This document shows positions 10,201 through 64,000 of a stretch of 64,000 nucleotides of DNA, piece by piece. Both the position numbers and the translations under genes were made by a program. The notes beneath the pieces were generated by a model, which saw only the letters and a list, made by a program, of their open reading frames with translations, searched no databases and was not told the DNA's origin. Origin of the DNA: Pecten maximus (lineage: Eukaryota); assembly GCF_902652985.1 (NCBI RefSeq), contig NC_047015.1:41106001-41170000 (forward strand). Direction: 5' to 3'. How positions within the stretch are numbered: the first letter of the stretch is position 1; every line of letters starts with the position of its first letter.

Positions 10201-13200
10201 TCTGTCTTTTAATTAAAATCATTTAGTCTTACCAATTGCTATAGATATTAACACACAACATTTACAACTTTTTTATATTGAATATGGTTTAGTGTCTCAT
10301 AAGCCACCTGCTGGTATGGCTGTGAATTTTAAAATGTTTGTACAAAATGTAATAACTTGTAAAAACTGAAATAAAATATCTTTTTCCGTTTTTTACCAGT
10401 GAAATATATATATATATAACTTAATTCTATAAAGTGAACTTATTTCTGATGTTTTACACTAGTGAAAAATATCACTTTCTGATTTGACCAATTAAAAGAC
10501 TGCTTACAAACAACAATGGGGAAACTTAAAAGCTGACCTGGTATGTTTTGCTATAAAAATGTAATAAACAGAATATCTAACAGTATCTTCATTAATACCA
10601 AATATACTTCACTAGTGTGGCTAATATTTTGATATTTTTCACTGGTGTTGTGCACATATGAAATATGTTTGGTATAACTGAAGACACTGTTAGATGTCCT
10701 CTATATATTCATTGATAGAATCGTTGATCTAATTACTTACTAGTATACTGGTTGTTTGAAGCCAATCCTGCCATCAGCTCTGTCCTGGTATGTGATGTTG
10801 ATGACAATGTTGGCACTGGGATCGCTACACTTGGGTTTCCAGCTTTCATCACAAGCCTGAATCTGGACCTATAGAACACAGGTAAAATACAGGTAAACAA
10901 CCAGTAAACAGGTAAACAGGTAAATACAGGTAAACAAACAGTAAACAGGTAAACAAGTGGTAAACATCGGTACACACTTAGTAAACAACAAGCTTGGAAA
11001 ATACACAGGAAAAGGACAAAACTATTAATTATCAGTTGATAGTGAGGATATGATGGTGTCAATATTTTTGCCGGAAACTTTGACTAGACTTACTAGAATT
11101 GCTATCATGACTCACCGTGATTGGACTGATGTTATTTGGAATGTAAAGGGACTGTTTTATGTACACCTCTCCATTGTCCGATACACCCACATATCGCGCG
11201 AAGGAGGCAGCATTTCCTAATACACTGTATGTAAACTGGGCATTTTTCGTCTGTAAAACAAAACAAACATTTCATGATATCAATCCACTCCTAAATAAGG
11301 ATAGATAGATATATCAAACTGATTAAGGTAGATAACTTCATATATAAAAAAAAACAAAGGAAGATAACGCTCTATATTAAACAAAGGCAGATAACTCCAT
11401 AAAGACAAAGGTAGATTACTCCATATAATAAACAAAGATAGATAACTCCACTGTTTGATTTAATGTATATAACTCAGTAACACACAGATGAAGATTGACT
11501 TTCTCAATTAAACATGAAACATACTACAGTTTTGTCGTAACATACAAAATCTGAAAATATGAGAAATAATGACGAAGGAAACGAAATTTAACAATAAATT
11601 TTTATAAAATGATTACTTACACCAGCGCTGAGAGGTACTTGAGAATCAGCATCAGTTGCAGTTACTGTGATCAGAGGTGTGCCAGCCCTGTCCGTATCTG
11701 TTGCACTCACTTGGTACACATTCGAGGAAAATTCTGGTGCATACGTGTTACGGACAATACTGACGGTGACAGTGGTTGAGGCAGACTTAGGGTTGTTAGA
11801 GGTATCCGAGGCCACTACTGTCAACTGCAATGTACAAGGATAGTCACGATTTGTAAATTACATTGTGGGAAGTTACAGTACATCAGTCCAAACAAACTTA
11901 CAATCGCCTAGCTTGATCATGACTTGATACGCATGGCTGAATATTTAATAAACTATTGATGGGAATTCAATAAATCAAAAAAAATCATTTTATCACCTTG
12001 CATAACAAGATAGTAATGTGTTTACAATTGACTATTGTCTGTTGATGCTTGGAACAAAAAAAACAAGTGGCCATTATAGGCAGGTGGCCTGATGTTTGGA
12101 ACAAAAACAAGTGGCCTTTATAGGCAGGTGGCCTGATGTTTGGAACAAAAACAAGGCCATTATAGGCAGGTGGCCTGATGTTTGGAACAAAAACAAGGCC
12201 ATTATATGCAGGTGGCCTGATGCATGGAACGAAAACAAGTATATATATAGAGATGGTCTTTGGAGGCAGGTTTGACTATCAAATTTAATACTTACAATGT
12301 ACTCATTGTCAGCTAAATCAGTTGTCAGTGGTTGTGCCAGTAGGATGATTCCAGTCGTCCTGGTGATGGTGAAGTATGAGTTGACAGTCTCTATACCGTA
12401 TCGTAGGATACCACTGGTACTGTTTATGTTGTCGTTGTCTGTGGCTGTGACCTGAATAACATCCGTGTCAATATCATGGTATTCCGATATTGATACACTG
12501 TGTGACTGTTGTCCAAATACAGGTGGGTTGGCATTCCTGTTTATATTGATAGTCACGGTGGCAGTTCCAGCTAAAGGTGAAGCACTTTGGTCTGTGGCAA
12601 GGACATTTATCTGGTAATTAAAACAAAACATTATCATTTTCATGCATTGTGTTCATATTCAAATCAACAATACCATATACGACAATCCCTGGACACAGAG
12701 TAAGATATTTGTCAGTCTTTTTATCAAATAGATGATTTCTTTTAAACTTTTCGTTTTGATGAAATTCATGAAATATGAATGAGTGGGCTTATTAGCAGGC
12801 ATGGACATATTGACGAAGAAATCGACCAATCAACAGTGAAGTGACATCATCACAATAAACAGAATCAGTTACAAAATTTTGACAGTATGCATAGTAAATA
12901 TCACACTTAGTAAACCTTACAACAATTACAGAACAAGTTATATCAAAATATGTCTCGTTAGCCAAAGAGTGCAAGGGGTCTCTTACTATGTGAGCAGCCC
13001 CTTGAGAAAACCCATGTGGTCGACCAGATGACTACACGGATCGCGAAATCAGATCCTGAACCACCTACGTGAAAGGTGAGTGTGTTAATACTGTGCCAAC
13101 CGACCAGTCATATGACATACTTATGGCCATACTTACAATGTATCTTTCCACTTGCTCGCGGTAAAGTATGCGGGAAGTAGTTATAACACCAGTTGTGGGA

Positions 13201-16200
13201 TTGACATTGAAGTAGAGGGTTGAAGGAAGGTTCGGGACGATGCTGTATACAATTGGATCCTACAATCAGAGAGAAACACAAATAACATCATGTTCATATA
13301 GTAGTAATTATTAGAGACCAGCAAGTCATGAATTTTAAATGTTAAAAAAATATTTCACCTTTTTCCTCAAGTAACTTTGGGAACCACTGACCATGTACCC
13401 TATCTAGTTTTCAGTTCAATTTAAACTAGAACTGTCGCCAGTATGGCTGACTAATACCCCCGCAATCTGCACGAGTCAATGATGAATTTGAACTTTTAAT
13501 TAGAGGCTAACTAAGACAAGGATGGATAGTATTGCAACAGCAATACAAAGTCCCCTGCCTGAGCTAGAAGTACACCTATTCATTTCCCATTTTTTTTTTT
13601 GAAAAATGGTTTTTCGAAAAAAACAAATGTGGGATGCACAACTACATGTTATACTGATCATGTATACCAAGTTTCGTTAAGATCGGAGTAGTACTTTAGG
13701 AGGAGTTGTCCGGACAACTATTGCGTGACAGACAGACAGACAGACGGACGGACGGACAACCTGATTCCAGTATACCCCCCTAACTTCATTGCGGGGGTAT
13801 AAAAAATATTCTACAAAATAAAAATATAATGCTTCATTTTTACTTTTAAAATCTAAAGGCTTATAATATTGTATACTTACATTGTCAGCATCTGTAGCTA
13901 GGATCTGGAGTATGTTATGACCAACTAACACATTCTCATCAATGGTTTCCTCATAGTTAGTCTGTGCAAACTCTGGAGCATGGGGGTTCCTCGTCACAAT
14001 GATAGTGACCTTGACCTTATTTTGACGACTTGGCACACCACTATCTTTAGCAACTACAAACATCTGTAAAAAGGACAGAAAGATTCTTAACACTGTTACA
14101 AAACTAATACAACAACTAACAGACAATATTGACAAAAGTGACCAATGAGGGAAAAATCAGAACAAAGAATATATTTTCATGGAGATCCTTATCAGGTATG
14201 AGAGGAATCGGACCAGGTGTTCAAGAAGAGTAAACATCTTCATCAAAGTATTTCTAAACAGATCTGCAAGTGTAGAAGAATACTGAATGATAAGTTGTAT
14301 TCAATGTCTGCCAATCATATAGAATAAATTCTTACTGTATAGCTCTGAGTTGTGGGGTCGGAACGCAGGTTTCCGATGACCAGGATGAGGCCGGATGAAG
14401 GATTGATGTAGAAGTAATCTCCACTGTAGATCGGCTGACTTTCTTGCTGACTGAAGAAGTATACAATCTTGCCATTGTCGCCCTGAAATACAAAATGTGT
14501 CTTGATTTATAATCCTTTAGTTTACAGAAAGGGAATGAACACAAAATAATTCTGAGAAGATGACTTGGGTTTGTTCTAAGGCATGAACTATTATTCTGCT
14601 GTTATCAAAATATTAACATCCATAAAATAACTTACCTGATCTTGATCCGTAGCTGATACATTTCCAACAATGTAGTTGAGGTCAGCATTTTCATTGATTG
14701 TGAAAGTGAGATCTCCATGGTTGAATAATGGTGTGTTCGGGTTACGGTTCACCTGAACTCTTACAAGGGCAAAGTCAAACTCAGACGGATCGTTCAATCG
14801 GTATCCATATACTCGGATCTATAAACAAGAAAGTTCATTACTGTTTTGGTAACATGGTTTTCACTTACTGCTGAGTTTTGTTTAAAAAATAACAGTCGGT
14901 TTACTGACAACACCGGACACAAATCATCATCATTGTAGTGAAATATCCGTAATTATTATAAAAAAAAACCAAAAAAAAACCGATATTATCACGATATAAT
15001 ATTTACATTTACACTGCAGCCCCACTATATCACTTTATCAAGCTCACTTGGAAGTTATGAGTCCATAACTTCCAAATCTTCATTATGACGTCATTATTAT
15101 AGTGACGTCATAATTATCACGTCGGCGATAACGAAAGATGGCTTTTGAAAAGGCTGTTCCGTCTTTGACGATAATAAGTTGTTTATTCATTATCAGAGTA
15201 AAATTCCTGGATAAAGTCTTTCAAATTCGTTGTCAAATGTAAATATAAGCATTGAACTGCTTTCATTTGGAAGTTATGGGCTGATGAATGTCAACTGGAC
15301 AAAGGCAAATTTAATGAAGTGCACTATAGCGCTTCATGTTGAATTTGCCTTTGTTCAGTTGGCATTCATCAGCCCATAACTTCCAAATGAAAGCAGTTCA
15401 ATGCTTAAATGGTTACAGTCATACACTCTTATGTAATAGACAGATCCCTATTGTAACAGACAAGAGAAGAACTTACAGTGTACATATTTGTTAAGCTGTC
15501 ATCTTCTGTGAATGCCTTGCTGAGAGTAATCTGGCCTGTAGCATTGTTGATGACAAAATGGTCTCTTGCCAATCCATCCCCACGAATCTCGTACACAATA
15601 GTGCTCTATAAAACAAAAAAGATATGTTAGTCCATAATTTGTCAGAGTACACATCCTTACATTGGCTAGTTAACAAGCCAGTCAAGTACCAGGTTATGTT
15701 TTTTTGCTTGCAGTGTAAAATTGTTATGATTAAGTACTGTATCCATCTTTATTGGAAATTAAAACTTTCGTTCTCATAGAAATCATAAGCTTAAGACAAG
15801 GATTACTGCGATTACATTTATGGTGTTCCAAACTGTTGGACAAGCTGATTCTTATTTCAGGTGAGCCTTGACAAAGACTTTCAAGGTCTGTATTGGCAGC
15901 TGTAGGCCCACGAAGATTTATGATTGAAATATTGTATTAGAAAAAAGATTTTCTGAAAATACAAATAGGCTCCATGATTTCACCACATACAATTAGCTAC
16001 CATGGAGGGATGAGATCTCAATTTGTTAATATTTATTTAGACAAAAACATCCTCCCTAAGATACTTACACCAGCTAATGGGTCTGTGGCATTTACTACAA
16101 CGATCGTGCTATTGACAGGGTAGGACTCTGGGTATACCACAAAGTATTCTGACTGACTGAAACGAATCTTTCCAACACGACCAATCGTTATGGTAACTGG

Positions 16201-58200: not shown

Positions 58201-61200
58201 GGTACTCGCTGGTCACATGCCCTAATGGTGATCTGTAATATTCAGACAGTAAAATGTAAGCAATGATATATACAGTACAGGTGTGAAATACACAAGGATG
58301 GAAATATGCAGGCGTGAAATGTAAAAGTACGAAAAGATACAAATGTGAACATTATTACATTATATTTGATGGATTTCAAACATTTTTTCTCCAGAATGAT
58401 GATAGTACTATACCCTATCTAGCGCCTGAGTGCCTTCTGAGAGGAGCTTCTTCAGGGTGATCAGTCCAGTGACAGGGTTGATGTAGTAGTACTCCAGAGC
58501 AAGGCTGTTACCAGTTATATCAAACCGTATCTCATCCTGTAAGTACAAATCACAAAATTGTAACACTGAAGAATACTACAAATAATGTAGCTGTAATATA
58601 TATCACTTGGCTTGAGAGGAATTCTGCATTCATTGCACAACATTATAATCATGGCCTATTCTTTGAATTATTAATAAAAAAAAAATGAAATAACAATAAT
58701 AATTCCACTGTTTCTTTCTAAGTGATGTCATATTAAATCAGAAACAAGAACAAATGAATTGATAAAACAGTTGAAAATTTGGAATTTTGTAATACTTTCG
58801 GAAGTATAAAGGGAAATAACTCTAGCATAACTTATAACTGCACAATTAGCATATAGTACCTTATATCTAATCCAGAAATTACACGTCACACTTACCCCAT
58901 CAGCATCAGTTGCGTTAATGTCTACGATTAGCGAGCCAAGTGGTATGTGGTCGTAGACTGTCCGGTCATACGGAGTGTTTATAAATACTGGGGCATTCCC
59001 GTTGCGGCTCACAAATACAGGTACAGTGGCTGTAGCTTGGTTTTCAGGGTAGACACTGTCATACGCGATCACGTGCAGCTGTAAAAATAGTTTATGGTAG
59101 CGTCATATTAAATTCAAATGGCATTTAAATCAAATTCATCATGAGTGATCACAAGTTACAGCCAAATTAATGTGGACTTACTGTTATAGACACATTCAGA
59201 CATATCTGAACAATGGTCATGTGACCTTCATTTATTTGGGCATGTACTATGATTTATCCTTAGGTAAGTTTCATTCCCCTGGGGAAAAATTATGATACAT
59301 TTTCCCTTCTGACTAGATGACAGATAAGCATACTTTTGAGACTACACTCAATGGACTTACCTGATAATTCTGTTGTACATCTCGTAACAAAAGGTTCTGG
59401 TTCTGGACAGACAGATAAGCGGTTGTTTTGTTGATAGAAAAGAAGGTAGCTGCAATACTGTCATGGATCACATCATACATGATTTGTCCCTGTAGACAAA
59501 AAAAACAGTTATATCAGCTGTGAAGTGTGAAAACAGCAGCTATAGGCAGAGCAATAACATAATCAAAAACTAAAATGTCACAATTAAAAAAAAAAGAAGA
59601 ATTTTAACTAAAAATAATGAAATAAAATTTTACCCTCCTGTCAGAATCAGTGGCCAAAATATTCGTGTAGAATACAGTGTTATCCACAGTGTTTTCGTTG
59701 GTGATGGCACTATAGGGCGTGTTTTGGAATTCTGGCGCGAAATTGTCCCGTAATACGATGACATGGACACGAGCCTGGCTCGTCCTGGCAGGATTACCTT
59801 GGTCAGATGCTTGTACATTGAACTGTCAATAGTAGAAAAGTTAACATTACCATAAAACACAAATAAATGCTTGTTACAAATAAATGCTTGTTACAAATAA
59901 ATGTGTGTTATGAGCCTTTTTTAAAATTCAGTGGCAGAAAAATCCTTCTGGGGTATACAAATGTGTTTTTTTAAAATTACATAATAAATTTTATTTACAT
60001 AACAGTGTTGCTTCTTCAACTTCTTAAGAAGAAAGCGTTTCAACTTTGATAGCATTCATAGCTAACAGGTTATCAATCTCAACCCAACGGGTTTCTTAAA
60101 CTAAGCAATTAGGAAATGAATCGAACTTGCTGTTAATTGTTAAATATTAATGGAGTGTCAGGGTTGGGGGCCCCTAGGTGGTGTCCTCACCGATTATTAT
60201 CAAAGACTAAAGCAGTGTTCATACACAAAATGTAAAGCAATAAATGTGTACCAAGTATATTAGAACTGATAGCTTTAGATAAAGTGTTAGACGAGGATAG
60301 AAGTCTTATATGAGTAAGTTGAATACTTACAGAGTAGTTGGCAACATTGGTCGAGGTAAGGAGACCTTGTAGAGTAATGACGCCAGAGTCAGCATTTATA
60401 AAGAAGAAGGTTGTGTACGGGGTACCATCTACAATGCTGAACTTTATCTGGTCCTAAAAAAGAAAACAACATTTTTAGTTTTTTAAAAACACAAAAGATT
60501 GAAAAAAAGCAATTTGGATTGAGCTGTATTTAGCTAGTCAGGGAATGGTTTCTGTAACTTCTAGACTAACATCTGGACTAGACAAAATTTCTTGTAACAT
60601 ATCCCCACAAAAAACAGGCTAGGGTAATTTATACCACCAGAAACAGATTAGATTATCATACTTCCCTAGAGACAAAATGGGGTTATTAACAGAACAGGGT
60701 TATCATACTTCCCTGGGGACAGAACAGGGTTATCATACTTCCCTGGGGACAGAACTGGGTTGTCATACTTCACTGGTGACAGAACTGGGTTATCATACTC
60801 CCCTGGGGACAGAACAGGGTTATCATACTCCCCTGGGGACAGAACAGGGTTATCATACTCCCCTGGGGACAGAACAGGGTTATCATACTCCCCTGGGGAC
60901 AGAACTGGGTTATCATACATCCTGGGGACAGAACAGAGTTATAACTCAATGTACTTACATTATCTGCATCATTTGCAGTGACTTGCAAAACAGTTGTTCC
61001 AAGGTCACGTTTTTCCTCAATGGGGGTTTGATAAAAGGTTGGGTTGAACACAGGTGGAAACTCGTTCCTCGTTACGAAGACATTGACAGTGGTAAAAGCT
61101 GTCTGGGTGGTCACATCAAAAGACACAGCCTTCACAAGCAACTGAAGTGGAACAAATTATTATTATATAACTACATACCGAATCACAGTTCTATATCTGT

Positions 61201-62124
61201 GCCCATTAAAGAGTAATTGAGCACAAATGAAATTATGATGGAATGACAGAATGATGGAGAAGGTTAACAAATTAGTTAAAATGGTGAGAACATATACAAT
61301 ATAATAGCAAATGGTTCCACATATGTGGTATAAGCACACTATTACATAATTGCTGTGCTTTTCTGACCTATGTAATTAATCATGAGGCCTGACTTACAAT
61401 GTAATGGGTGAGTTGGGAGCTGTCAGTCTTCAGATCTTGTTGTACCAGGATGTCACCGCTGTTCTTATTCAAGGAGAAATAAGTAGGCCCCGGATCTCTC
61501 CCGGTCAGGGTGTACTCGATGCTTACCTACAAATTGTTACATGTCAAAGTTGTTAAAGTGACAAGCTAAACATTTAAAAAGAACAATCCACTTCTGTTAC
61601 TTTTGTTTTCACAATCAAATTAAAATTACAGAAAGTTACATATTTTACTTAATATAAACAATATAAATACTTGACAAATATGTTGATAAAAAAAAATACA
61701 AACATTGATAACCCACACTGACATTCAATGAAAACACATTTAAAGGATTATCAGAAACCTTGTAATTAGTGTCAGTCTATCAGAAACCTTGTAATTAGTG
61801 TCAGTCTATCAGAAACCTTGTTAGTGTCAGTCTATCAGAAACCTTATCAGTATCAGCCTATCAGAAACCTTAAAATGTGATCTGATAACCTTTCAGATTA
61901 TTAAAAAAGTTTAAAATCATATTTCTAAAATCAAAACTTAAACTTACCCCTGGTGAAGCAACTACACGGGTCACAAAGTCGTTGATTGGTGAATTTTCGC
62001 TTTTAGTCACATTGTACACGGGAAGTGCGAAGGACAGAACGCCCGAGCTTCGCAGGACATTGACAGTTAATGTGGCAGTCGCCTGTTTAATGGGCACACC
62101 TTGATCCATAGCGACAATAGTCAG
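4162..62124 (-). CDS. Giant non-classical cadherin (PCDH15/Cad99C/CDH23-like architecture), 5'-partial, 85 exons, >=4512 aa, >=40 EC repeats + membrane-adjacent domain + TM + PDZ-binding tail
   Basis: 85 exons, all bounded by AG/GT with compatible phases, concatenate into one open frame of 13,539 nt ending in TAA at 4162-4164. Recurrent cadherin motifs are present (PxF, xE, AxDxD, FxIxxxTGxI, AxDxGxP), with one canonical FDYE...DVNDNSP linker, a 24-aa hydrophobic helix and C-terminal TTML. No start codon or signal peptide is in the window. The family assignment comes from architecture, not from a search. Confidence 0.92.
4757..4899 (-). CDS. cadherin exon 84 (cytoplasmic)
   Basis: 143 nt, 0-2; SLNMYVPP...AVNPIFV. 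Confidence 0.85.
5074..5173 (-). CDS. cadherin exon 83 (cytoplasmic)
   Basis: 100 nt, 2-0; YTKYINQYRIY...PPSFLREYETQ. Confidence 0.85.
5315..6085. repeat. 32-bp minisatellite, ~22 copies
   Basis: Unit ACTCAACCACGAGGTCAATAACTGTTTACCCC, degenerate at both ends. Confidence 0.95.
6263..6496 (-). CDS. cadherin exon 82 (transmembrane helix at 6274-6345)
   Basis: 234 nt, 2-2; VFTADK...WAALVALAAIIILLCIVGIIVLVFTHS. Confidence 0.9.
6893..7003. repeat. purine-rich GGAG/GGAA low-complexity tract
   Basis: ggagggaaggagggatgg... repeats. Confidence 0.9.
7027..7098 (-). CDS. cadherin exon 81 (membrane-adjacent domain)
   Basis: 72 nt, 2-2; TDVIFVLGEP...NTRMP. Confidence 0.8.
7462..7560 (-). CDS. cadherin exon 80 (membrane-adjacent domain)
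   Basis: 99 nt, 2-2; AIQDEFQKVCIIERIERRR...IDDA. Confidence 0.85.
7794..7885 (-). CDS. cadherin exon 79 (membrane-adjacent domain)
   Basis: 92 nt, phase 0-2; INIIYHYNRFVLV...KAVIR. Confidence 0.85.
8351..8581 (-). CDS. cadherin exon 78 (last EC)
   Basis: 231 nt, 0-0; ATDEDSELLG...TQSTAY. Confidence 0.9.
8824..9011 (-). CDS. cadherin exon 77 (only canonical DxNDN linker)
   Basis: 188 nt, phase 1-0; (I)QNTHPIASVIIDVLDVNDNSPIF...VMRVH. Confidence 0.9.
9847..10106 (-). CDS. cadherin exon 76 (FDYE motif, RKKR furin site)
   Basis: 260 nt, phase 2-1; (Y)LQLRENID...FDYE...GRKKRQIF. Confidence 0.88.
10310..10705. mobile_element. MITE-like element with terminal hairpin
   Basis: ATCTAACAGTATCTTCATTAATACCAAA (~10574-10601) pairs imperfectly with TTTGGTATAACTGAAGACACTGTTAGAT (~10668-10695); CACTAGTGAAAAATATCA / TGATATTTTTCACTGGTG inverted pair. 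Confidence 0.55.
10741..10868 (-). CDS. cadherin exon 75
   Basis: 128 nt, phase 0-2; VQIQACDESWKPKC...GFKQPVY. Confidence 0.87.
11116..11250 (-). CDS. cadherin exon 74
   Basis: 135 nt, 0-0; TKNAQFTYS...NISPIT. Confidence 0.87.
11621..11824 (-). CDS. cadherin exon 73
   Basis: 204 nt, 0-0; LTVVASDTS...VPLSAG. Confidence 0.9.
12045..12240. repeat. ~45-bp tandem repeat, ~4 copies
   Basis: TGATGTTTGGAACAAAAACAAG(T)GGCCATTATAGGCAGGTGGCC. Confidence 0.9.
12296..12610 (-). CDS. cadherin exon 72 (fused long+short exon)
   Basis: 315 nt, 0-0; INVLATDQS...ADNEYI. Confidence 0.9.
12958..13110 (-). mobile_element. degenerate SINE-like remnant
   Basis: The minus strand begins GGTCGGTTGGCACAGTATTAACACACTCACCTTTCAC, a decayed tRNA-like head, in a GC-richer island within an AT-rich intron. 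Confidence 0.3.
13137..13259 (-). CDS. cadherin exon 71
   Basis: 123 nt, 0-0; DPIVYSIVP...QVERYI. Confidence 0.9.
13423..13805 (+). mobile_element. short HINE-like element
   Basis: 13-bp inverted repeat ATACCCCCGCAAT (13454-13466) / ATTGCGGGGGTAT (13788-13800); 3' hairpin TATACCCCC..GGGGGTATA; (GACA)n(GACG)n microsatellite; A-rich ends. Confidence 0.75.
13881..14063 (-). CDS. cadherin exon 70
   Basis: 183 nt, 0-0; MFVVAKDSG...ATDADN. Confidence 0.9.
14336..14482 (-). CDS. cadherin exon 69
   Basis: 147 nt, 0-0; GDNGKIVYF...TTQSYT. Confidence 0.9.
14636..14818 (-). CDS. cadherin exon 68
   Basis: 183 nt, 0-0; IRVYGYRLN...ATDQDQ. Confidence 0.9.
15246..15407. repeat. ~160-bp near-perfect palindrome (hairpin MITE), adjacent to a second inverted-repeat segment 14999-15246
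   Basis: TAAGCATTGAACTGCTTTCATTTGGAAGTTATGGGCTGATGAATG ... CATTCATCAGCCCATAACTTCCAAATGAAAGCAGTTCAATGCTTA. Confidence 0.9.
15477..15605 (-). CDS. cadherin exon 67
   Basis: 129 nt, 0-0; STIVYEIRG...LTNMYT. Confidence 0.9.
16069..16251 (-). CDS. cadherin exon 66
   Basis: 183 nt, 0-0; FTVGVRDQG...TDPLAG. Confidence 0.9.
16629..16763 (-). CDS. cadherin exon 65
   Basis: 135 nt, 0-0; TSFNSKLNY...PQDVWQ. Confidence 0.85.
16795..17856. repeat. 21-bp minisatellite, ~50 copies, filling intron 64
   Basis: Unit GGCATTGTAATAGAGGGTAAA; it produces the spurious 220-aa ORFs. Confidence 0.97.
17881..18066 (-). CDS. cadherin exon 64
   Basis: 186 nt, 0-0; LRVIVRDTS...TDPDPV. Confidence 0.9.
18173..18425 (+). 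mobile_element. decayed HINE-like element
   Basis: GTCCCCAACCAA near the 5' end versus TTGGTAGGGGAC near the 3' end; internal GTGACCTTGA; (CATA)n tract. Confidence 0.45.
18538..18675 (-). CDS. cadherin exon 63
   Basis: 138 nt, 0-0; MPENNLFYS...KPLDYI. Confidence 0.9.
19045..19230 (-). CDS. cadherin exon 62
   Basis: 186 nt, 0-0; LLIEAYDTK...TDSDTT. Confidence 0.87.
19539..19667 (-). CDS. cadherin exon 61
   Basis: 129 nt, 0-0; GAIRYEVKG...LFPNYF. Confidence 0.9.
19780..19965 (-). CDS. cadherin exon 60
   Basis: 186 nt, 0-0; FNVFVSDSR...SDSDLQ. Confidence 0.9.
20413..20538 (-). CDS. cadherin exon 59
   Basis: 126 nt, 0-0; DRLIYTSDM...TPSRFD. Confidence 0.87.
20766..20948 (-). CDS. cadherin exon 58
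   Basis: 183 nt, 0-0; LRVEVYDSY...ATDADG. Confidence 0.9.
21289..21980 (+). mobile_element. HINE-like element
   Basis: 5' CAAGAGGCCCATGGGCC plus GTCATCTGA; 3' GACG/GACA tract then hairpin GTCATC..CCTTCGG..TCAGATGAC; internal repeat at ~370-bp spacing and 3x21-bp repeat at ~21599-21665. Confidence 0.7.
22014..22142 (-). CDS. cadherin exon 57
   Basis: 129 nt, 0-0, AAG acceptor; GNMTYKLVG...ETMEYT. Confidence 0.86.
22313..22501 (-). CDS. cadherin exon 56
   Basis: 189 nt, 0-0, AAG acceptor; VQIEATDNG...TDQDRR. Confidence 0.86.
22535..22750. repeat. 23/29-bp tandem repeat, ~8 copies
   Basis: (ATACC)CTAATCTGTACCAGGTTATCAACC. Confidence 0.92.
23268..23393 (-). CDS. cadherin exon 55
   Basis: 126 nt, 0-0; STLTCSVIG...VTEIYT. 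Confidence 0.87.
23650..24055. repeat. 47-bp tandem repeat of exon 54 3' end + 5' splice site, 8 donor copies
   Basis: Unit CCAGCAATACTTACACTATCCGGGTCGGATACATTGAGGGCTAGGGA; donors at 24018, 23971, 23924, 23877, 23830, 23783, 23736, 23689. Confidence 0.96.
24019..24201 (-). CDS. cadherin exon 54 (donor tandemly duplicated)
   Basis: 183 nt, 0-0; LEVVAYDTG...VSDPDS. Confidence 0.88.
24383..24511 (-). CDS. cadherin exon 53
   Basis: 129 nt, 0-0; GDIVYETVG...NLLKYT. Confidence 0.9.
24865..25898. repeat. 42-bp (some 31-bp) tandem repeat of exon 52 3' end + 5' splice site, ~25 copies
   Basis: Unit TTGACCTTGACACCTGTACTTACCAGCGTTGGTGTCCTTGTA; the minus strand reads ...ACGCTG|GTAAGTAC. Confidence 0.96.
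25881..26066 (-). CDS. cadherin exon 52 (3' end ambiguous: tandem donor ladder)
   Basis: 186 nt to the first donor, 0-0; CQVAVTDNG...TRTPTL. Confidence 0.82.
26195..26317 (-). CDS. cadherin exon 51
   Basis: 123 nt, 0-0; DTLEYSLTG...NDPQYN. Confidence 0.9.
26673..26855 (-). CDS. cadherin exon 50
   Basis: 183 nt, 0-0; LTVRAYDNN...ANDNDN. Confidence 0.9.
27246..27557 (-). CDS. cadherin exon 49 (fused long+short exon)
   Basis: 312 nt, 0-0; MVVRATDSG...RTAVYT. Confidence 0.9.
27968..28440. repeat. 39-bp minisatellite, ~12 copies
   Basis: AATTGATCATAATTAACTCTTTGACAGTGCTGTAGTAAC. Confidence 0.96.
28451..28585 (-). CDS. cadherin exon 48
   Basis: 135 nt, 0-0; DEVVYDLIG...SVSSFS. Confidence 0.9.
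29362..29544 (-). CDS. cadherin exon 47
   Basis: 183 nt, 0-0; LTIEAYDSA...ASDADG. Confidence 0.9.
29557..30452. repeat. ~58-61-bp minisatellite, ~15 copies
   Basis: AGTCTTATAATCCCTCACTGTTATCCTACACGATGAGAGGATATAAATCAGTAGACAAATT. Confidence 0.96.
30718..30843 (-). CDS. cadherin exon 46
   Basis: 126 nt, 0-0; GNMTYVVTG...ARTTYI. Confidence 0.9.
31155..31340 (-). CDS. cadherin exon 45
   Basis: 186 nt, 0-0; FTVRASDQS...TDADLR. Confidence 0.9.
31739..31855 (-). CDS. cadherin exon 44
   Basis: 117 nt, 0-0; DTVQYTVTS...AQKSFT. Confidence 0.88.
32485..32670 (-). CDS. cadherin exon 43
   Basis: 186 nt, 0-0; LRVQVYDSE...ASDADN. Confidence 0.9.
33122..33250 (-). CDS. cadherin exon 42
   Basis: 129 nt, 0-0; ETGGKLEYK...NALNYV. 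Confidence 0.87.
34050..34232 (-). CDS. cadherin exon 41
   Basis: 183 nt, 0-0; MTIEASDQR...TDVDLS. Confidence 0.9.
34717..34830 (-). CDS. cadherin exon 40
   Basis: 114 nt, 0-0; DVMAFRILG...DPVTYV. Confidence 0.88.
35047..35232 (-). CDS. cadherin exon 39
   Basis: 186 nt, 0-0; MTVAVYDSY...AGDIDN. Confidence 0.9.
35782..35901 (-). CDS. cadherin exon 38 (acceptor duplicated 49 nt upstream)
   Basis: 120 nt, 0-0; GTLQYMVSG...NVVNFV. Confidence 0.87.
35888..35986. repeat. perfect 49-bp tandem duplication containing the exon 38 3' splice site
   Basis: TATTGGAGGGTTCCCTGTCAAACACATCTCAATGTCTAAATACATATCT x2. Confidence 0.95.
36476..36670 (-). CDS. cadherin exon 37
   Basis: 195 nt, 0-0; FNVRARDQG...SDADRR. 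Confidence 0.9.
37062..37196 (-). CDS. cadherin exon 36
   Basis: 135 nt, 0-0; DDVRYNIVN...PVAQYS. Confidence 0.9.
37504..37689 (-). CDS. cadherin exon 35
   Basis: 186 nt, 0-0; LRVEAYDMA...AIDPDG. Confidence 0.9.
37976..38110 (-). CDS. cadherin exon 34
   Basis: 135 nt, 0-0; LPSRIMYEI...NTLVYT. Confidence 0.87.
38501..38686 (-). CDS. cadherin exon 33
   Basis: 186 nt, 0-0; MVIEAADQR...VDDDLL. Confidence 0.9.
38893..39337. repeat. 32-bp minisatellite, ~14 copies
   Basis: GAATACAGCGATCCTYTCYAAGTTAACAATTT. Confidence 0.96.
39470..39595 (-). CDS. cadherin exon 32
   Basis: 126 nt, 0-0; DVVTYRIVS...LFNNTI. Confidence 0.9.
39601..39905. repeat. ~62-bp tandem repeat, ~5 copies
   Basis: AAACACAAACCCC..TAATAAAATACCAGATAATACAGTATTGAGTAAAATATAT. 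Confidence 0.88.
40315..40503 (-). CDS. cadherin exon 31
   Basis: 189 nt, 0-0; VELSVYDSL...SDSDPL. Confidence 0.87.
40795..40923 (-). CDS. cadherin exon 30
   Basis: 129 nt, 0-0; GVLVYEITG...NLVRYT. Confidence 0.9.
41189..41374 (-). CDS. cadherin exon 29
   Basis: 186 nt, 0-0; FTVYARDQR...RDTDLT. Confidence 0.9.
41495..46829. repeat. 5.3-kb 29/31-bp satellite filling intron 28 (~175 copies)
   Basis: Unit ACTAGAACTGTACTGGGTATTATCTATAG with or without AG/GG; begins ~5 nt from the exon 28 donor. Confidence 0.98.
46835..46957 (-). CDS. cadherin exon 28
   Basis: 123 nt, 0-0; DIPVYRMTG...PTVQYN. Confidence 0.9.
47237..47755. repeat. 26-bp minisatellite, ~20 copies
   Basis: ACACCATCAGTAGTACCTACAATGTA. 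Confidence 0.96.
47788..47970 (-). CDS. cadherin exon 27
   Basis: 183 nt, 0-0; FKVMTFDTG...AVDLNG. Confidence 0.9.
48294..48410 (-). CDS. cadherin exon 26
   Basis: 117 nt, 0-0; GQVVYEVVV...LDITYR. Confidence 0.88.
48808..48993 (-). CDS. cadherin exon 25
   Basis: 186 nt, 0-0; LGVQACDTG...IDNSPL. Confidence 0.9.
49272..49415 (-). CDS. cadherin exon 24
   Basis: 144 nt, 0-0; DDISYSIVD...DITRFV. Confidence 0.9.
49613..49798 (-). CDS. cadherin exon 23
   Basis: 186 nt, 0-0; YLVVAYDSL...TDNDNH. Confidence 0.9.
50335..50466 (-). CDS. cadherin exon 22
   Basis: 132 nt, 0-0; GSVKYRAIG...QYSQFT. Confidence 0.88.
50799..50990 (-). CDS. cadherin exon 21
   Basis: 192 nt, 0-0; MTVQATDDR...TDADVK. Confidence 0.9.
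51435..51560 (-). CDS. cadherin exon 20
   Basis: 126 nt, 0-0; DTMTYTALP...RRLSFQ. Confidence 0.88.
51622..51778. repeat. ~47-bp tandem repeat, 3 copies
   Basis: TAATCTAAACTTTATATATGTTACTACACGACACAGAATATAAACAC. Confidence 0.9.
51871..52053 (-). CDS. cadherin exon 19
   Basis: 183 nt, 0-0; LVVEAYDSQ...ASDNDG. Confidence 0.9.
52244..52366 (-). CDS. cadherin exon 18
   Basis: 123 nt, 0-0; GYMVYQVVG...INTEYF. Confidence 0.9.
52596..52787 (-). CDS. cadherin exon 17
   Basis: 192 nt, 0-0; MNVRVRDQR...RDLDMQ. Confidence 0.9.
52949..53092 (-). CDS. cadherin exon 16
   Basis: 144 nt, 0-0; DTLRYELLS...RPTLYQ. Confidence 0.9.
53102..53255. repeat. 50-bp tandem repeat, 3 copies
   Basis: ATAGTCATATAACTCCATAATTAGACTGCACAGTCATCTAATATCTAACG. 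Confidence 0.92.
53334..53510 (-). CDS. cadherin exon 15
   Basis: 177 nt, 0-0; VILTAYDSG...ASDGDG. Confidence 0.9.
53730..53852 (-). CDS. cadherin exon 14
   Basis: 123 nt, 0-0; GQMVYNIVG...IVEQYL. Confidence 0.9.
54077..54253 (-). CDS. cadherin exon 13
   Basis: 177 nt, 0-0; FTVTVRDVG...NDQDLQ. Confidence 0.88.
54431..54559 (-). CDS. cadherin exon 12
   Basis: 129 nt, 0-0; DKLAFYMDA...IYNQFT. Confidence 0.9.
54565..54880. repeat. degenerate ~30-bp tandem repeat
   Basis: AAAAAGTTACACAAATGTTACCATAGTAAC-like units. Confidence 0.75.
55162..55344 (-). CDS. cadherin exon 11
   Basis: 183 nt, 0-0; LRVAAFDTF...ATDADN. Confidence 0.9.
55654..55782 (-). CDS. cadherin exon 10
   Basis: 129 nt, 0-0; ETINYVVEG...QTGVYE. 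Confidence 0.9.
55806..57925. repeat. 40-bp minisatellite, ~53 copies, filling intron 9
   Basis: TAAGTGTATMCACTGATGTTAGACTTTATCTCACGGGAGT. Confidence 0.98.
58047..58232 (-). CDS. cadherin exon 9
   Basis: 186 nt, 0-0; ITIRACDQR...TDADLE. Confidence 0.9.
58414..58536 (-). CDS. cadherin exon 8
   Basis: 123 nt, 0-0; DEIRFDITG...TQALDR. Confidence 0.87.
58896..59078 (-). CDS. cadherin exon 7
   Basis: 183 nt, 0-0; LHVIAYDSV...ATDADG. Confidence 0.9.
59361..59489 (-). CDS. cadherin exon 6
   Basis: 129 nt, 0-0; GQIMYDVIH...VQQNYQ. Confidence 0.9.
59634..59822 (-). CDS. cadherin exon 5
   Basis: 189 nt, 0-0; FNVQASDQG...TDSDRR. Confidence 0.9.
60331..60453 (-). CDS. cadherin exon 4
   Basis: 123 nt, 0-0; DQIKFSIVD...NVANYS. 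Confidence 0.9.
60688..60945. repeat. 30-bp minisatellite, ~8 copies
   Basis: GGGGACAGAACAGGGTTATCATACTCCCCT. Confidence 0.95.
60959..61141 (-). CDS. cadherin exon 3, long type X
   Basis: 183 nt, 0-0; LLVKAVSFD...ANDADN. Confidence 0.9.
61398..61526 (-). CDS. cadherin exon 2, short
   Basis: 129 nt, 0-0; VSIEYTLTG...QLTHYI. Confidence 0.85.
61749..61870. repeat. ~29-bp tandem repeat, ~4 copies
   Basis: TATCAGAAACCTTGTAATTAGTGTCAGTC. Confidence 0.85.
61948..62124 (-). CDS. cadherin exon 1 (in window), long type Y
   Basis: AG/GT, 177 nt, phase 0-0; LTIVAMDQG...VVASPG. Confidence 0.88.
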
Positions 62125-62149
62125 CTAAAACAACAGAATAATATGGCTT

Positions 62150-64000
62150 TCAGTCTATAATACTTATAAAATTCCTCCAATCTATAATACATCTATAATT
62201 CCTCCAGTCTATAATACATCTATAATTCCTCCAATCTATAATACATCTATAATTCCTCCAGTCTATAATACATCTATAATTCCTTCAGTCTATAATACAT
62301 CTATAATTCCTCCAATCTATAATACATCTATAATTCCTTCAGTCTATAATACATCTATAATTCCTCCAATCTATCATACATCTATAATTCCTCCAGTCTA
62401 TAATACATCTATAATTCCTCCAGTCTATAATACATCTATAATTCCTCACGTCTATAATACATCTATAATTCCTCCAATCTATCATACATCTATAATTCCT
62501 CCAGTCTATAATACTTATATAATTCCTCCAGTCTATAATACATCTATAATTCCTCCAGTCTATAATACATCTATAATTCCTCCAGTCTATAATACTTATA
62601 TAATTCCTCCAATCTATCATACATCTATAATTCCTCCAGTCTATGATACATCTATAATTCCTCCAGTCTATAATACATCTATAATTCCTCCAGTCTATAA
62701 TACTTATAAAATTCCTCCAATCTATAATACTTCTATAATTCCTCCAGTCTATAATACATCTATAATTCCTCCAATCTTTAATACATCTATAATTCCTCCA
62801 GTCTATGATACATCTATAATTCCTCCAGTCTATAATACATCTATAATTCCTCCAATCTATAATACATCTATAATTCCTCCAGTCTATAATACATCTATAA
62901 TTCCTTCAGTCTATAATACATCTATAATTCCTCCAGTCTATAACACATCTATAATTCCTCCAATCTATAATACATCTATAATTCCTCCAGTCTATAATAC
63001 TTATATAATTCCTCCAGTCTATAATACATCTATAATTCCTCCAGTCTATAATACATCTATAATTCCTCCAGTCTATAATACTTATATAATTCCTCCAGTC
63101 TATAACACATCTATAATTCCTCCAATCTATAATACATCTATAATTCCTCCAGTCTATAATACTTATATAATTCCTCCAGTCTATAATACATCTATAATTC
63201 CTCCAGTCTATAATACATCTATAATTCCTCCAGTCTATAATACTTATATAATTCCTCCAGTCTATAACACATCTATAATTCCTCCAATCTATAATACATC
63301 TATAATTCCTCCAGTCTATAATACTTATATAATTCCTCCAGTCTATAATACATCTATAATTCCTCCAGTCTATAATACATCTATAATTCCTCCAATCTTT
63401 AATACATCTATAATTCCTCCAGTCTATGATACATCTATAATTCCTCCAGTCTATAATACATCTATAATTCCTCCAATCTATAATACATCTATAATTCCTC
63501 CAGTCTATAATACATCTATAATTCCTTCAGTCTATAATACATCTATAATTCCTCCAGTCTATAACACATCTATAATTCCTCCAATCTATAATACATCTAT
63601 AATTCCTCCAGTCTATAATACTTATATAATTCCTCCAGTCTATAATACATCTATAATTCCTCCAGTCTATAATACATCTATAATTCCTCCAGTCTATAAT
63701 ACTTATATAATTCCTCCAATCTATAATACATCTATAATTCCTCCAGTCTATAATACATCTATAATTCCTCCAGTCTATGATACATCTATAATTCCTCCAG
63801 TCTATGATACATCTATAATTCCTCCAGTCTATAATACATCTATAATTCCTCCAGTCTATGATACATCTATAATTCCTCCAGTCTATAATACATCTATAAT
63901 TCCTCCAGTCTATAATACATCTATAATTCCTCCAGTATATAATTCCTCCAATCTATAATACATCTATAATTCCTCCAGTCTATAATACATCTATAATTCC
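62150..64000. repeat. 27-bp satellite, >=68 copies, runs off the window end
   Basis: CAGTCTATAATACATCTATAATTCCTC. Confidence 0.98.

What the first reader, a model, noticed from the sequence alone, without database searches (positions are those of the whole stretch)
10741..62124. Systematic rewrite of the Ca2+-binding linker: DxNDN becomes x-R-[ND]-x-x-x-P and DRE is lost in 39 consecutive linkers
Seen: none of the 39 linkers from exon 1 to exon 75 has DxNDN. 34 have Arg at position 2 and 29 read R[ND] (IRNPNAP, NRNPNTP, DRDEQAP, LRDNFAP). The LDRE motif is absent, while AxDxD and the F-strand AxD are mostly kept. Only the last linker is canonical (FDYE...DVNDNSP). Known from E-cadherin structures: sites 1 and 2 need the DRE acids and D1/D4 of DxNDN, whereas site 3 uses N3, DxD and AxD. 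Inference: each linker binds one Ca2+ (site 3), and the conserved Arg may salt-bridge the retained A-strand Glu in place of the missing ions. That would give a long filament with altered Ca2+ dependence and elasticity. PCDH15 has a few atypical linkers, but a whole chain with one uniform alternative motif is striking.
Basis: partly seen in the sequence, partly recalled or inferred. Interest (0 to 1): 0.8.

Follow-up and report, generated by a model that had tools for sequence, protein, structure and literature searches.

The report
Giant scallop cadherin with Arg-Asn linkers
A scallop gene encodes a cell-surface cadherin of about 85 repeats in which 74 consecutive inter-repeat linkers carry a conserved Arg-Asn motif in place of the usual three-calcium motif; the family is shared by molluscs, brachiopods and nemerteans and its linker has not been studied.

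Summary
On the minus strand lies an expressed, spliced giant cadherin gene with two phase-0 exons per EC repeat. In the window, 34 of 38 linkers have Arg at position 2, 29 read R[ND], and none reads DxNDN. The gene continues about 65 kb upstream, giving 74 consecutive linkers of this class (Arg 67/74). These are flanked by about 8 mostly canonical-like N-terminal linkers and one canonical membrane-proximal linker.

The same architecture and cytoplasmic tail occur in gastropods, bivalves, a brachiopod and a nemertean. All are auto-named "protocadherin Fat 4-like", yet none has the LamG or EGF domains of Fat.

Across about 1,390 family linkers, the four site-3 ligands are as conserved as in canonical cadherins. 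D67, D1 and D4 of the canonical motifs are gone. An unbiased scan shows the Arg covaries most strongly with the A-strand Glu of the same linker, with charge swaps.

AlphaFold2 confidently predicts an EC-EC orientation unlike any solved pair, whereas a canonical control matches at 1.4-3 Å.

This is a new variant of a known kind. Other notes of this scan touch the same gene or genome but not this linker motif.

The parts
4753..64000 (-). Window part of the giant cadherin gene (C-terminal half: about 40 EC repeats, TM, tail, stop). The gene continues upstream of the window to at least G000:C1:41234735.
61948..62124 (-). Linker exon, heptad LRSSGVL. DxD and the next F-strand D are also lost: likely Ca-free hinge.
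60959..61141 (-). Linker exon, TRNEFPP
59634..59822 (-). Linker exon, LRDNFAP
58896..59078 (-). Linker exon, SRNGNAP
58047..58232 (-). Linker exon, NRDNFPP
55162..55344 (-). Linker exon, NRNPAAP
54077..54253 (-). Linker exon, DRDEQP
53334..53510 (-). Linker exon, AHNINEP (His for Arg); boundaries confirmed by RNA contigs
52596..52787 (-). Linker exon, NRNSNSP; RNA-confirmed
51871..52053 (-). Linker exon, IRNRFAP; RNA-confirmed
50799..50990 (-). Linker exon, LRDLFTP; RNA-confirmed
49613..49798 (-). Linker exon, TRNSNPP; RNA-confirmed
48808..48993 (-). Linker exon, NRQGFPP (N3 lost, DxD reads DNS); RNA-confirmed
47788..47970 (-). Linker exon, IRNAFKP; RNA-confirmed
41189..41374 (-). Linker exon, DLDANP (no Arg)
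40315..40503 (-). Linker exon, IRNPNAP
38501..38686 (-). Linker exon, IRNPADKRP (two-residue insertion)
37504..37689 (-). Linker exon, IRNPASP
36476..36670 (-). Linker exon, ERDSSNP
35047..35232 (-). Linker exon, IRNPGAP
34050..34232 (-). Linker exon, NPNQPP (no Arg)
32485..32670 (-). Linker exon, TRNPNPP
31155..31340 (-). Linker exon, DRDEQAP
29362..29544 (-). Linker exon, RRNINSP
27246..27557 (-). Fused linker plus mid-EC exon (intron lost), QRITAP; no DxD: likely Ca-free. Passes the Pfam Cadherin cut-off.
26673..26855 (-). Linker exon, ERNPNTP
25881..26066 (-). Linker exon, VRGQLP; DxD replaced by RTP: likely Ca-free. A tandem repeat array follows it.
24019..24201 (-). Linker exon, ARNLNGP
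22313..22501 (-). Linker exon, PRDLSNP
20766..20948 (-). Linker exon, DRNPTGP
19780..19965 (-). Linker exon, TQLAGPP (no Arg, no N3)
19045..19230 (-). Linker exon, NRNVFPP
17881..18066 (-). Linker exon, NRNDPPS
16069..16251 (-). Linker exon, GRVGKI; DxD degenerate and the next F-strand D is Arg: likely Ca-free
14636..14818 (-). Linker exon, NRNPNTP
13881..14063 (-). Linker exon, TRNPHAP
12296..12610 (-). Fused linker plus mid-EC exon, NRNANPP. Pfam Cadherin 36.1 bits (cut-off 28.8).
11621..11824 (-). Linker exon, VRNTYAP (last Arg-Asn linker)
11113..61526 (-). Series of 37 mid-EC exons (C-E strands) alternating with the linker exons. They carry the DRE-equivalent L-x-x-[D/x]. Six have boundaries confirmed by RNA contigs, to within a base or so where the joint is ambiguous: 48294-48409, 49272-49414, 50335-50465, 51435-51559, 52244-52365, 52949-53091.
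10743..10868 (-).
9818..10099 (-). Penultimate EC exon with canonical FDYE and a furin-like GRKKRQ site
8818..9012 (-). Exon with the only canonical linker in the window, DVNDNSP
8372..8581 (-). Last EC exon (ATDEDSE...)
6262..6468 (-). Juxtamembrane and transmembrane exon (YVWWIDDPWAALVALAAIIILLCIVGIIVLVFTHSR); 57-70% identical to mollusc homologues
5074..5187 (-). Cytoplasmic exon (...PDFMEPPSFLREYETQ), 66-68% identical to homologues
4756..4902 (-). Last coding exon (SLNMYVPPDE...AAVNPIFVQ, then a stop); holds an NPxY-like motif

Best explanation
What it is (shown). This is the C-terminal half of an expressed gene for a single-pass membrane cadherin of about 85 EC repeats. It belongs to a conserved lophotrochozoan family.

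Layout (shown). About 8 N-terminal linkers are canonical-like or variable. Then come 74 consecutive Arg-Asn linkers (x-R-[N/D]-x-x-x-P), one odd linker, and a furin-like site. Last come one canonical linker, a TM helix and a short conserved tail.

Residues (shown). Each Arg-Asn linker keeps the four ligands of Ca2+ site 3: N3, D-x-D and the F-strand D of the next repeat. It lacks D67, D1 and D4, which build sites 1 and 2.

Mechanism (inferred).
- Each such linker binds one Ca2+, at site 3.
- The conserved Arg, sometimes with a Lys/Arg at the D67 position, pairs with the retained A-strand Glu and the Asp at the E69 position. These basic side chains take the place of the two missing ions.
- The junction is therefore held by one ion plus a salt-bridge network. 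AlphaFold2 gives it an inter-repeat orientation different from the canonical straight linker.
- Repeated about 74 times, with 5-8 fully Ca-free hinges, this would give a very long filament whose shape and stiffness depend less on Ca2+ than those of ordinary cadherins. At the roughly 4.5 nm per repeat of textbook cadherins, a straight chain would be over 300 nm long.
For: Gene and expression.
- Transcript contigs from four studies splice out all 12 introns tested, with GT..AG ends on the minus strand. One contig is 16.8 kb long.
- Pfam Cadherin passes its cut-off on the two fused exons.

Extent.
- There are 79 linker exons over about 117 kb.
- Arg at position 2 in 67/74, R[ND] in 62/74, and all four site-3 ligands in 64/74.

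Family.
- 46 Arg-Asn-dominant proteins were found: gastropods, bivalves, Lingula and Tubulanus, plus two MetaClust entries whose organism was not resolved.
- They share the layout, TM segment and tail.

Residue conservation over about 1,390 linkers versus about 1,240 canonical ones.
- N3: N/D 89% vs 92%.
- DxD: 97/97% vs 99/100%.
- F-strand D: 95% vs 95%.
- D4: absent vs 84%.
- D67: absent vs 79%.
- A-strand Glu: 66% E plus 10% D.
- E69 position: 50% D plus 6% E.

Concerted loss. In a few linkers the site-3 ligands are lost together.

Precedent. PCDH15 EC5-6 shows the same pattern and holds one Ca2+ at site 3 (PMC7547225).

Arg-Glu coupling.
- OR 3.1 with the Glu of the same linker, against OR 0.86 (not significant) with the Glu of the next repeat.
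- That Glu is the top-ranked of about 200 columns (z 19). The E69-position Asp is the next non-adjacent column (z 12).
- The two acids do not covary with each other (OR 0.96), so this is not simple co-degeneration.
- Charge swaps: OR 12, p 8e-7, with 0/38 in the control.

Geometry.
- AF2 model of a two-EC fragment: pLDDT 93.5, pTM 0.76.
- About 200 residues align to every solved EC pair, but only at 7.6-10 Å or worse.
- Single ECs fit at about 2 Å.
- A canonical control built the same way fits about 50 solved pairs at 1.4-3 Å.
Against: - No experiment or ion-aware model was available. Stoichiometry, Arg contacts and the angle are not measured, because the tools give no model coordinates.
- Covariation counts are inflated by shared descent. 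Orthologous linkers from related species are counted several times. Within the scallop gene alone the Arg-Glu association is not significant (p 0.17), because only 6 of 74 linkers lack a basic residue at position 2.
- In canonical structures the side chain at position 2 of DxNDN is not a ligand, only its backbone O. An inward-pointing Arg therefore needs a rearranged linker.
- About half the linkers keep Glu, Asp and D136, which might still hold a second ion.
- The AF2 result rests on one fragment and a 20-row alignment of paralogous repeats, without Ca2+.
Confidence: 0.55

Rival explanations
1. Two-ion linkers. Where the A-strand Glu and the Asp at the E69 position are both present, sites 2 and 3 are occupied, as in PCDH15 EC3-4 or mouse PCDH24 EC2-3. 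The Arg then faces outward or only tunes affinity.
For: - About 36% of family linkers have both acids.
- D136 and the backbone O of position 2 remain available.
- Two-ion linkers with degenerate DRE or DXNDN are known (PMC7547225; PMC8691648).
Against: - D1 and D4 of DxNDN, both site-2 ligands, are absent throughout.
- A cationic Arg sits at the residue whose carbonyl would bind that ion.
- Arg covaries positively with exactly those acids, and charge swaps occur. This fits pairing better than a bound ion.
Confidence: 0.2
2. Packing Arg. The Arg is chiefly a packing or interface residue. It fixes a novel EC-EC angle, or mediates lateral (cis) contacts or binding to anionic matrix components. 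It does not replace Ca2+ at sites 1 and 2.
For: - AF2 predicts a confident non-canonical inter-repeat orientation.
- Arg also covaries with a few positions elsewhere in the unit, for example position 10 of the next repeat's mid-EC exon and positions 16/17 of the same repeat's mid-EC exon.
Against: - The strongest partners are the two former Ca2+ ligands.
- The charge swap involves linker position 1 and the Glu position.
- This reading is not exclusive of the main one.
Confidence: 0.15
3. Ca2+-free throughout. The retained Asp and Asn residues are structural relics or hydrogen-bond partners of the Arg.
For: - Ca-free cadherin linkers exist, for example PCDH15 EC9-10 and LI-cadherin EC2-3.
- Some linkers of this gene clearly lost everything.
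Against: - The four site-3 ligands are conserved at canonical levels over more than 1,000 linkers and at least three phyla.
- In a few linkers they are lost together, as expected for a working ion site.
Confidence: 0.07

Closest known systems
Protocadherin-15 EC5-6 partial Ca2+-free linker (PMC7547225)
   Same: DRE is absent. D1 and D4 of DXNDN are absent with N3 kept (PPNNQ). DXD and XDX of the next repeat are kept. One Ca2+ is seen at site 3.
   Different: It is a single linker in an 11-EC protein. It has no conserved Arg, its XEX is also degenerate (YTD), and it is conformationally variable. Here one uniform motif with Arg and a retained Glu is repeated 74 times and conserved across phyla.
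Two-ion linkers: PCDH15 EC2-3 and EC3-4, mouse PCDH24 (CDHR2) EC2-3
   Same: Loss of part of the canonical ligand set, with retention of site 3.
   Different: Those keep D1 and/or D4 and lose only site 1. They are isolated linkers.
Fat / Fat4 and Dachsous giant cadherins (the automatic names of all family members)
   Same: Very many EC repeats and a single TM. Some predicted Ca-free linkers cause bends.
   Different: Fat has 34 ECs with mostly canonical linkers, LamG and EGF domains before the TM, and a different tail. None of these is present here.
Octopus cadherin with over 70 EC domains, highly expressed in suckers (PMC6062618, citing Wang and Ragsdale 2017, which was not readable here)
   Same: A mollusc cadherin of about the same extraordinary repeat number; possibly the cephalopod orthologue.
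   Different: Orthology was not tested because no octopus sequence was retrieved. It was presented as a cephalopod novelty, and I found no description of its linkers. The family shown here is pan-lophotrochozoan.
Cadherin-23 (27 ECs, tip link)
   Same: A long filament-forming cadherin. It gives the highest-ranked structural matches for the ECs.
   Different: Its linkers are mostly canonical three-ion linkers. It has 27 ECs plus a MAD domain.

Membership tests
Cadherin superfamily | Tandem EC repeats matching the Cadherin domain model (PF00028) with a cadherin fold | tested here: met
   - Pfam 36.1 and 31.8 bits (cut-off 28.8) on the two single-exon pieces long enough to score.
- 14-25 matched stretches in homologues.
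- AF2 single ECs fit solved ECs at about 2 Å.
Cadherin superfamily | Canonical linker motif set XEX / DXD / D(R/Y)E / XDX / DXNDN giving three Ca2+ per linker | tested here: not met
   In 74 consecutive linkers DXNDN reads xR[N/D]xx and D(R/Y)E reads x-x-[D/x]. XEX, DXD and XDX are kept.
Fat (FAT1-4 / Drosophila Fat, Kugelei) | Laminin-G and EGF domains between the EC array and the TM | tested here: not met
   - No LamG or EGF in P0051, P0010 or P0130, which include the C-terminus.
- The precomputed Pfam lists of Arg-Asn proteins lack PF02210, PF00054 and PF00008, which true Fat hits carry.
- None in the window segments scanned.
Fat (FAT1-4 / Drosophila Fat, Kugelei) | About 32-34 EC repeats with mostly canonical linkers | tested here: not met
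   About 85 ECs in the scallop and 63-71 detected linker units in near-full-length homologues, with 0-5 canonical linkers each.
Dachsous | 27 ECs with canonical linkers, and a Dachsous-type cytoplasmic domain | tested here: not met
   The EC number and linker type differ. The tail was compared only with family members, not with Dachsous.
PCDH15 EC5-6-type site-3-only linker (works like) | DRE absent; D1 and D4 of DXNDN absent with N3 kept; DXD and XDX of the next repeat kept | tested here: met
   against the motif description in PMC7547225.
PCDH15 EC5-6-type site-3-only linker (works like) | Exactly one Ca2+ bound, at site 3 | not testable with these tools
   Needs a structure with ions, or ITC.
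Lophotrochozoan Arg-Asn giant cadherins (family delimited here) | Long uninterrupted run of xR[N/D]xxxP linkers, then a furin-like site, one canonical DVNDNxP linker and a TM of the type WAALVALAAIIILL. The tail carries QSLNMYVPPD and NPxY. | tested here: met
   Scallop. Elysia, Gigantopelta, Patella, Plakobranchus, Potamilus, Tubulanus and Lingula.

The most novel reading that the evidence does not exclude
The Arg-Asn linker is not a floppy, degenerate linker. It is a distinct, rigid junction made of one Ca2+ at site 3 plus an Arg-Glu/Asp salt-bridge cluster, and it sets a fixed non-canonical angle between repeats. About 74 identical junctions would then wind the ectodomain into a regular superhelical spring or coil, interrupted by a few Ca-free hinges. 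A conserved furin-like cut may release this filament from its canonical membrane stub. That would be a previously unrecognised type of extracellular filament, invented once in the lophotrochozoan ancestor.
Probability: 0.25. Interest if true: 0.8.

Novelty: new variant of a known kind. Interest (0 to 1): 0.66.

Why it matters
Atypical cadherin linkers are known only as isolated exceptions, in PCDH15, CDH23, CDHR2, LI-cadherin, DN-cadherin, CELSR and Fat. They are thought to tune bending and elasticity.

Here evolution has built and kept, since before molluscs, brachiopods and nemerteans diverged, whole filaments of 60-80 repeats from one alternative junction. This offers three things:
- A natural test of how far a cadherin chain can dispense with Ca2+ sites 1 and 2.
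- A candidate example of basic side chains replacing structural metal ions.
- If the predicted geometry holds, a new filament architecture.

It also corrects the automatic "Fat 4-like" naming of dozens of database entries. And it suggests that the giant octopus sucker cadherin may be one member of an old lophotrochozoan family rather than a cephalopod invention.

Tried and rejected
- Joined model left out. All window searches used single exons or an alignment of single exons (A1). Complete EC pairs for folding were unchanged stretches of database homologues, one per protein.
- Seeding the mid-EC exons. jackhmmer from one mid-EC exon found only itself. I seeded an HMM from a regex instead.
- Donor sites. 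My first donor sites for several mid-EC exons were wrong. RNA contigs corrected them.
- The 39th linker. I first read the exon at 10736-11083 in the wrong frame. Homologue tblastn gave the right one, 10743-10868.
- Fat4, Fat1 and cadherin-23 membership, as in the automatic names, is rejected.
- Recent tandem duplication as the cause of the uniform motif is rejected: six Arg codons, 31% median identity.
- A genome-wide quirk is rejected: other scallop cadherins are canonical.
- Papers not held. Wang and Ragsdale 2017 and the octopus genome paper were not held, so orthology with the octopus giant cadherin is untested.
- Literature searches for this linker or for giant lophotrochozoan cadherins found nothing relevant.
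- The first exon with the signal peptide was not located within 25 kb upstream of the most N-terminal hit.
- No model coordinates are exposed, so the Arg contacts and the bend angle of the AF2 model could not be measured.
Full report
**1. What is in the window**

The window is G000:C1:41106001-41170000 of a 918-Mb, 3,983-contig animal genome. Another note of this scan calls it a scallop. From memory the assembly size fits Pecten maximus, which I did not test.

Nearly all long stop-free segments with cadherin-like sequence lie on the minus strand. Iterative HMM searches define two alternating exon types, both only on the minus strand.
- 38 linker exons carry the F and G strands of one EC, the linker, and the A and B strands of the next EC up to DxD.
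- 37 mid-EC exons carry the C to E strands.
- All introns are phase 0 with ordinary splice sites.
- Two introns have been lost, giving fused exons at 27246-27557 and 12296-12610. These pieces are long enough to pass Pfam's Cadherin cut-off.

Transcript contigs from four independent studies splice out all 12 introns between 47700 and 53600 at the predicted linker-exon boundaries. They corrected my mid-EC exon donors. One contig is 16.8 kb long. The gene is therefore real, expressed and spliced as modelled.

Everything from the window was analysed exon by exon.

**2. The observation**

In the alignment of the 38 linker exons (A1), the heptad in register with canonical D-x-N-D-N-x-P gives these counts:
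- Arg at position 2: 34/38.
- R[ND]: 29/38.
- DxNDN: 0/38.

The register is confirmed by phmmer alignments to solved cadherins.

This is not chance, recent duplication or a genome-wide habit.
- Arg is 5.1% of these exons overall.
- The conserved Arg uses all six codons.
- The exons are 31% identical at the median.
- Three other cadherin loci of the same genome read DVNDNxP and LDRE.

- The odd exon 10743-10868 is the 39th linker.
- FDYE lies at 9818-10099.
- DVNDNSP lies at 8818-9012.
- TM and tail exons lie at 6262-6468, 5074-5187 and 4756-4902.

**3.

A search of the whole assembly with A1 shows the same exon series continuing upstream on the same strand. I fetched 90 kb more upstream. In genomic order there are 79 linker exons.
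- Numbers 6 to 79 form 74 consecutive linkers of the Arg-Asn class. Arg is at position 2 in 67/74 and R[ND] in 62/74.
- Further upstream lie about 8 N-terminal linkers that are canonical-like or variable. They read INDINDNTP, IQDADDLSP, VNPANQFGP, TDVNDLTP, TPSGTEAP, TDINDFVP, LDVQDNVP and DMNDATP.
- With the odd linker and the last canonical one, this makes about 84 linkers, or about 85 ECs.
- The signal-peptide exon was not found.

**4. Which Ca2+ ligands survive**

I mapped the mid-EC exons on canonical repeats. The spacing from the L of LDRE to the conserved Tyr is 8 residues, as in classical cadherins.

In the 74 scallop linkers:
- A-strand Glu (XEX): E 51, D 4.
- D67 position: D in 2 of 70; K or R in 15.
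- E69 position: D 32, E 6.
- DxD intact: 63.
- F-strand D of the next repeat: 68.
- All four site-3 ligands present together: 64/74.

In a few linkers N3, DxD and in some the F-strand D are lost together. The clearest in the window start at 62124, 27557, 26066 and 16251, and upstream there is number 24. These are probably Ca-free hinges. The concerted loss argues that elsewhere these residues work as one site.

**5. It is a family**

A profile search of 1.84 billion representative proteins with A1 returned thousands of cadherins. Counting motifs in the best 150 splits them cleanly.
- Most have 10-44 canonical linkers.
- A minority have 9-32 Arg-Asn linkers and 0-5 canonical ones.

Two word-index searches added more. 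In all, 46 Arg-Asn-dominant proteins were found:
- Gastropods: Haliotis, Patella, Aplysia, Elysia, Biomphalaria, Gigantopelta, Nucella, Pomacea, Babylonia, Candidula, Plakobranchus.
- Bivalves: Saccostrea, Crassostrea, Mytilus, Tegillarca, Solemya, Sinanodonta, Potamilus, Mya.
- The brachiopod Lingula and the nemertean Tubulanus.
- Two MetaClust-only entries (P0007, P0024) whose organism I could not resolve.

Nearly all named entries carry automatic names such as "protocadherin Fat 4-like". The rest are "hypothetical", "uncharacterized", "unnamed protein product" or "cadherin-23-like".

Near-full-length models from Elysia, Gigantopelta, Nucella and Mya are 7,043-7,916 aa long. They show the scallop layout:
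- a signal peptide;
- a few canonical-like linkers;
- most of the 63-71 detected linkers of the Arg-Asn class.

Models that reach the C-terminus show the rest of the layout:
- a furin-like R-x-K/R-R site;
- one DVNDNxP linker;
- a TM of the type WAALVALAAIIILL;
- a tail with QSLNMYVPPD and NPxY.

These include Elysia, Gigantopelta, Patella, Plakobranchus and Potamilus. Potamilus lacks the furin-like site. Tubulanus and Lingula share the tail and the furin-like site, so the gene predates the split of these phyla.

None has the LamG or EGF domains that define Fat cadherins. Giant cadherins of Nematostella, Sycon and Monosiga in the same hit list have canonical linkers. No Arg-Asn-dominant protein from outside Lophotrochozoa appeared, but only top-ranked hits could be inspected.

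**6. Family-wide conservation**

| Position | About 1,390 Arg-Asn linkers | About 1,240 canonical linkers |
|---|---|---|
| Heptad position 2 | R 80% | not conserved |
| N3 | N 74% + D 15% | N 87% + D 5% |
| DxD | D 97% / D 97% | D 99% / D 100% |
| F-strand D | 95% | 95% |
| D4 | absent | D 84% |
| D67 | absent | D 79% |
| A-strand Glu | E 66% + D 10% | E 94% |
| E69 position | D 50% + E 6% | E 84% |

Site 3 is thus under the same constraint as in ordinary cadherins, while sites 1 and 2 have been dismantled in a uniform way.

The closest solved precedent is PCDH15 EC5-6. There DRE is absent and DXNDN reads PPNNQ, with DXD and XDX kept. It holds a single Ca2+ at site 3 (PMC7547225).

**7. What the Arg does**

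I tabulated, linker by linker, the residues that would meet in space.
- A basic residue at position 2 goes with an acidic A-strand residue of the same linker: 80% vs 56%, OR 3.1.
- It does not go with the A-strand residue of the following repeat, which is nearer in sequence but belongs to the next linker: OR 0.86, not significant.
- It also goes with an acid at the E69 position: OR 3.3.
- The two acids do not covary with each other (OR 0.96), so this is not mere co-degeneration.
- A Lys or Arg at the D67 position goes with both acids: OR 6.5 and 2.1. This holds within the scallop gene alone (p 0.015 and 0.007).

An unbiased scan of about 200 columns of the two-repeat unit ranks the same-linker Glu first (z 19). 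After the two neighbouring heptad positions, the E69-position Asp comes next (z 12).

Where the Glu position is itself Arg or Lys, position 2 is non-basic in 20 of 42 cases, against about 17% overall. In 9 of those 42, linker position 1 is Asp or Glu as well, against 2% elsewhere (OR 12, p 8e-7). The control using the next repeat's Glu position gives 0/38. That is a charge swap.

These statistics count related sequences more than once. Within the scallop alone the Arg-Glu test lacks power (p 0.17). The pattern is nonetheless what a direct Arg-Glu/Asp contact in place of Ca2+ at sites 1 and 2 predicts. It remains an inference.

**8. Predicted geometry**

I folded a two-EC stretch of the Sinanodonta homologue P0165 with 19 other family stretches as its alignment, using AlphaFold2.
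- Result: pLDDT 93.5, pTM 0.76, linker pLDDT 95-97.
- Each EC fits solved ECs at about 2 Å.
- No solved two-EC structure fits better than 7.6 Å over about 200 residues, and Foldseek TM is 0.42-0.50.
- This includes bent Ca-free linkers: PCDH15 EC9-10 at 11.8 Å, DN-cadherin at 16.9 Å and LI-cadherin at 18.3 Å.

A canonical control made in the same way, with 15 rows, gave pLDDT 96 and pTM 0.79. It fits about 50 solved pairs at 1.4-3 Å over about 200 residues.

So the predictor assigns the Arg-Asn junction a confident orientation unlike any solved pair. This is one fragment, without ions, and I could not read coordinates. I treat it as a lead: the junction may be a distinct rigid geometry rather than a floppy one.

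**9. Literature**

Searches for this linker or for giant lophotrochozoan cadherins found nothing. A review mentions an extraordinarily large octopus cadherin gene with over 70 EC domains, highly expressed in suckers, and lists it as a cephalopod novelty (PMC6062618). The primary paper was not available. It may be the cephalopod member of this family, which is untested.

**10. Verdict**

The thing is a new variant of a known kind: a partial-Ca2+ cadherin linker made uniform, Arg-bearing and family-defining.

Noticed in passing
window 9847-9890 (-): A furin-like site (GRKKRQ) lies about 20-30 residues before the only canonical linker. It is conserved in Elysia (RRKR), Gigantopelta (RTKR), Patella (RKKR), Plakobranchus (RRKR), Tubulanus (RRKR or RQKR) and Lingula (RKKR). 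The Arg-Asn filament may therefore be cleaved from its membrane stub.
   Followed up: partly
window 4756-5187 (-): The short cytoplasmic tail is conserved across phyla: ...PDFxxPPSFLREYETQ | SLNMYVPPD ... NPxY. It reads NPIF in the scallop, NPIY in Elysia and Tubulanus, NPVY in Gigantopelta and Mya, and NPTY in Lingula. No Pfam family matches. The NPxY-like motif suggests PTB-adaptor binding or endocytosis.
   Followed up: partly
window 62124, 27557, 26066, 16251 (linker exon starts); upstream G000:C1:41197448: Several linkers have lost N3 and DxD together, and in three of them the next F-strand D as well. They look like fully Ca-free hinges spaced along the filament.
   Followed up: partly
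window 62342-63952, 60669-60938, 27894-28450, 24814-26186, 16767-17900: Large tandem-repeat (satellite) arrays sit inside introns of the gene. The array at 24814-26186 starts right after, and overlaps the reading frame of, the linker exon 25881-26066. Earlier notes s1-802711 and s1-802918 concern these.
   Followed up: no
G000:C1:41170402-41220556 (upstream half) versus window: The two halves of the Arg-Asn run differ in repeat subtype. Upstream, the linker exon runs past DxD and the next exon starts [FYN]N-x-[IV]-x-Y, with heptads mostly RNL[NF]xP. In the window half the exon ends at DxD[GN] and the heptads are RNP.. or RD.., often alternating. Homologues show the same two blocks and an RN/RD alternation, which hints at a two-EC super-repeat.
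   Followed up: no
P0021 (Lingula anatina homologue): In the brachiopod, Arg-Asn linkers with DxD alternate almost regularly with degenerate linkers without DxD (NRNPNPP, ERRARAP, NRNPHKP, VRG-LQP ...). This is a different, two-repeat periodic design.
   Followed up: no
P0022 and P0117 (unnamed ENA proteins from the profile search): Two other giant cadherin-like proteins also have uniform non-canonical linkers. P0022 alternates TETNKPP and LNNKGSP. P0117 alternates ADVQEAP and TEVPTAP, with DAE and DPE in place of DxD. Both consist of near-identical repeats. Their source organisms are unknown.
   Followed up: no
G000:C6 and C7 (e.g. C6:36726610, C6:7364000-7372000, C7:5389000-5394000): There are many single-exon cadherin genes with open frames of 800-1,800 aa and canonical linkers, several of them close together on C6 and C7. 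I used three only as controls.
   Followed up: partly
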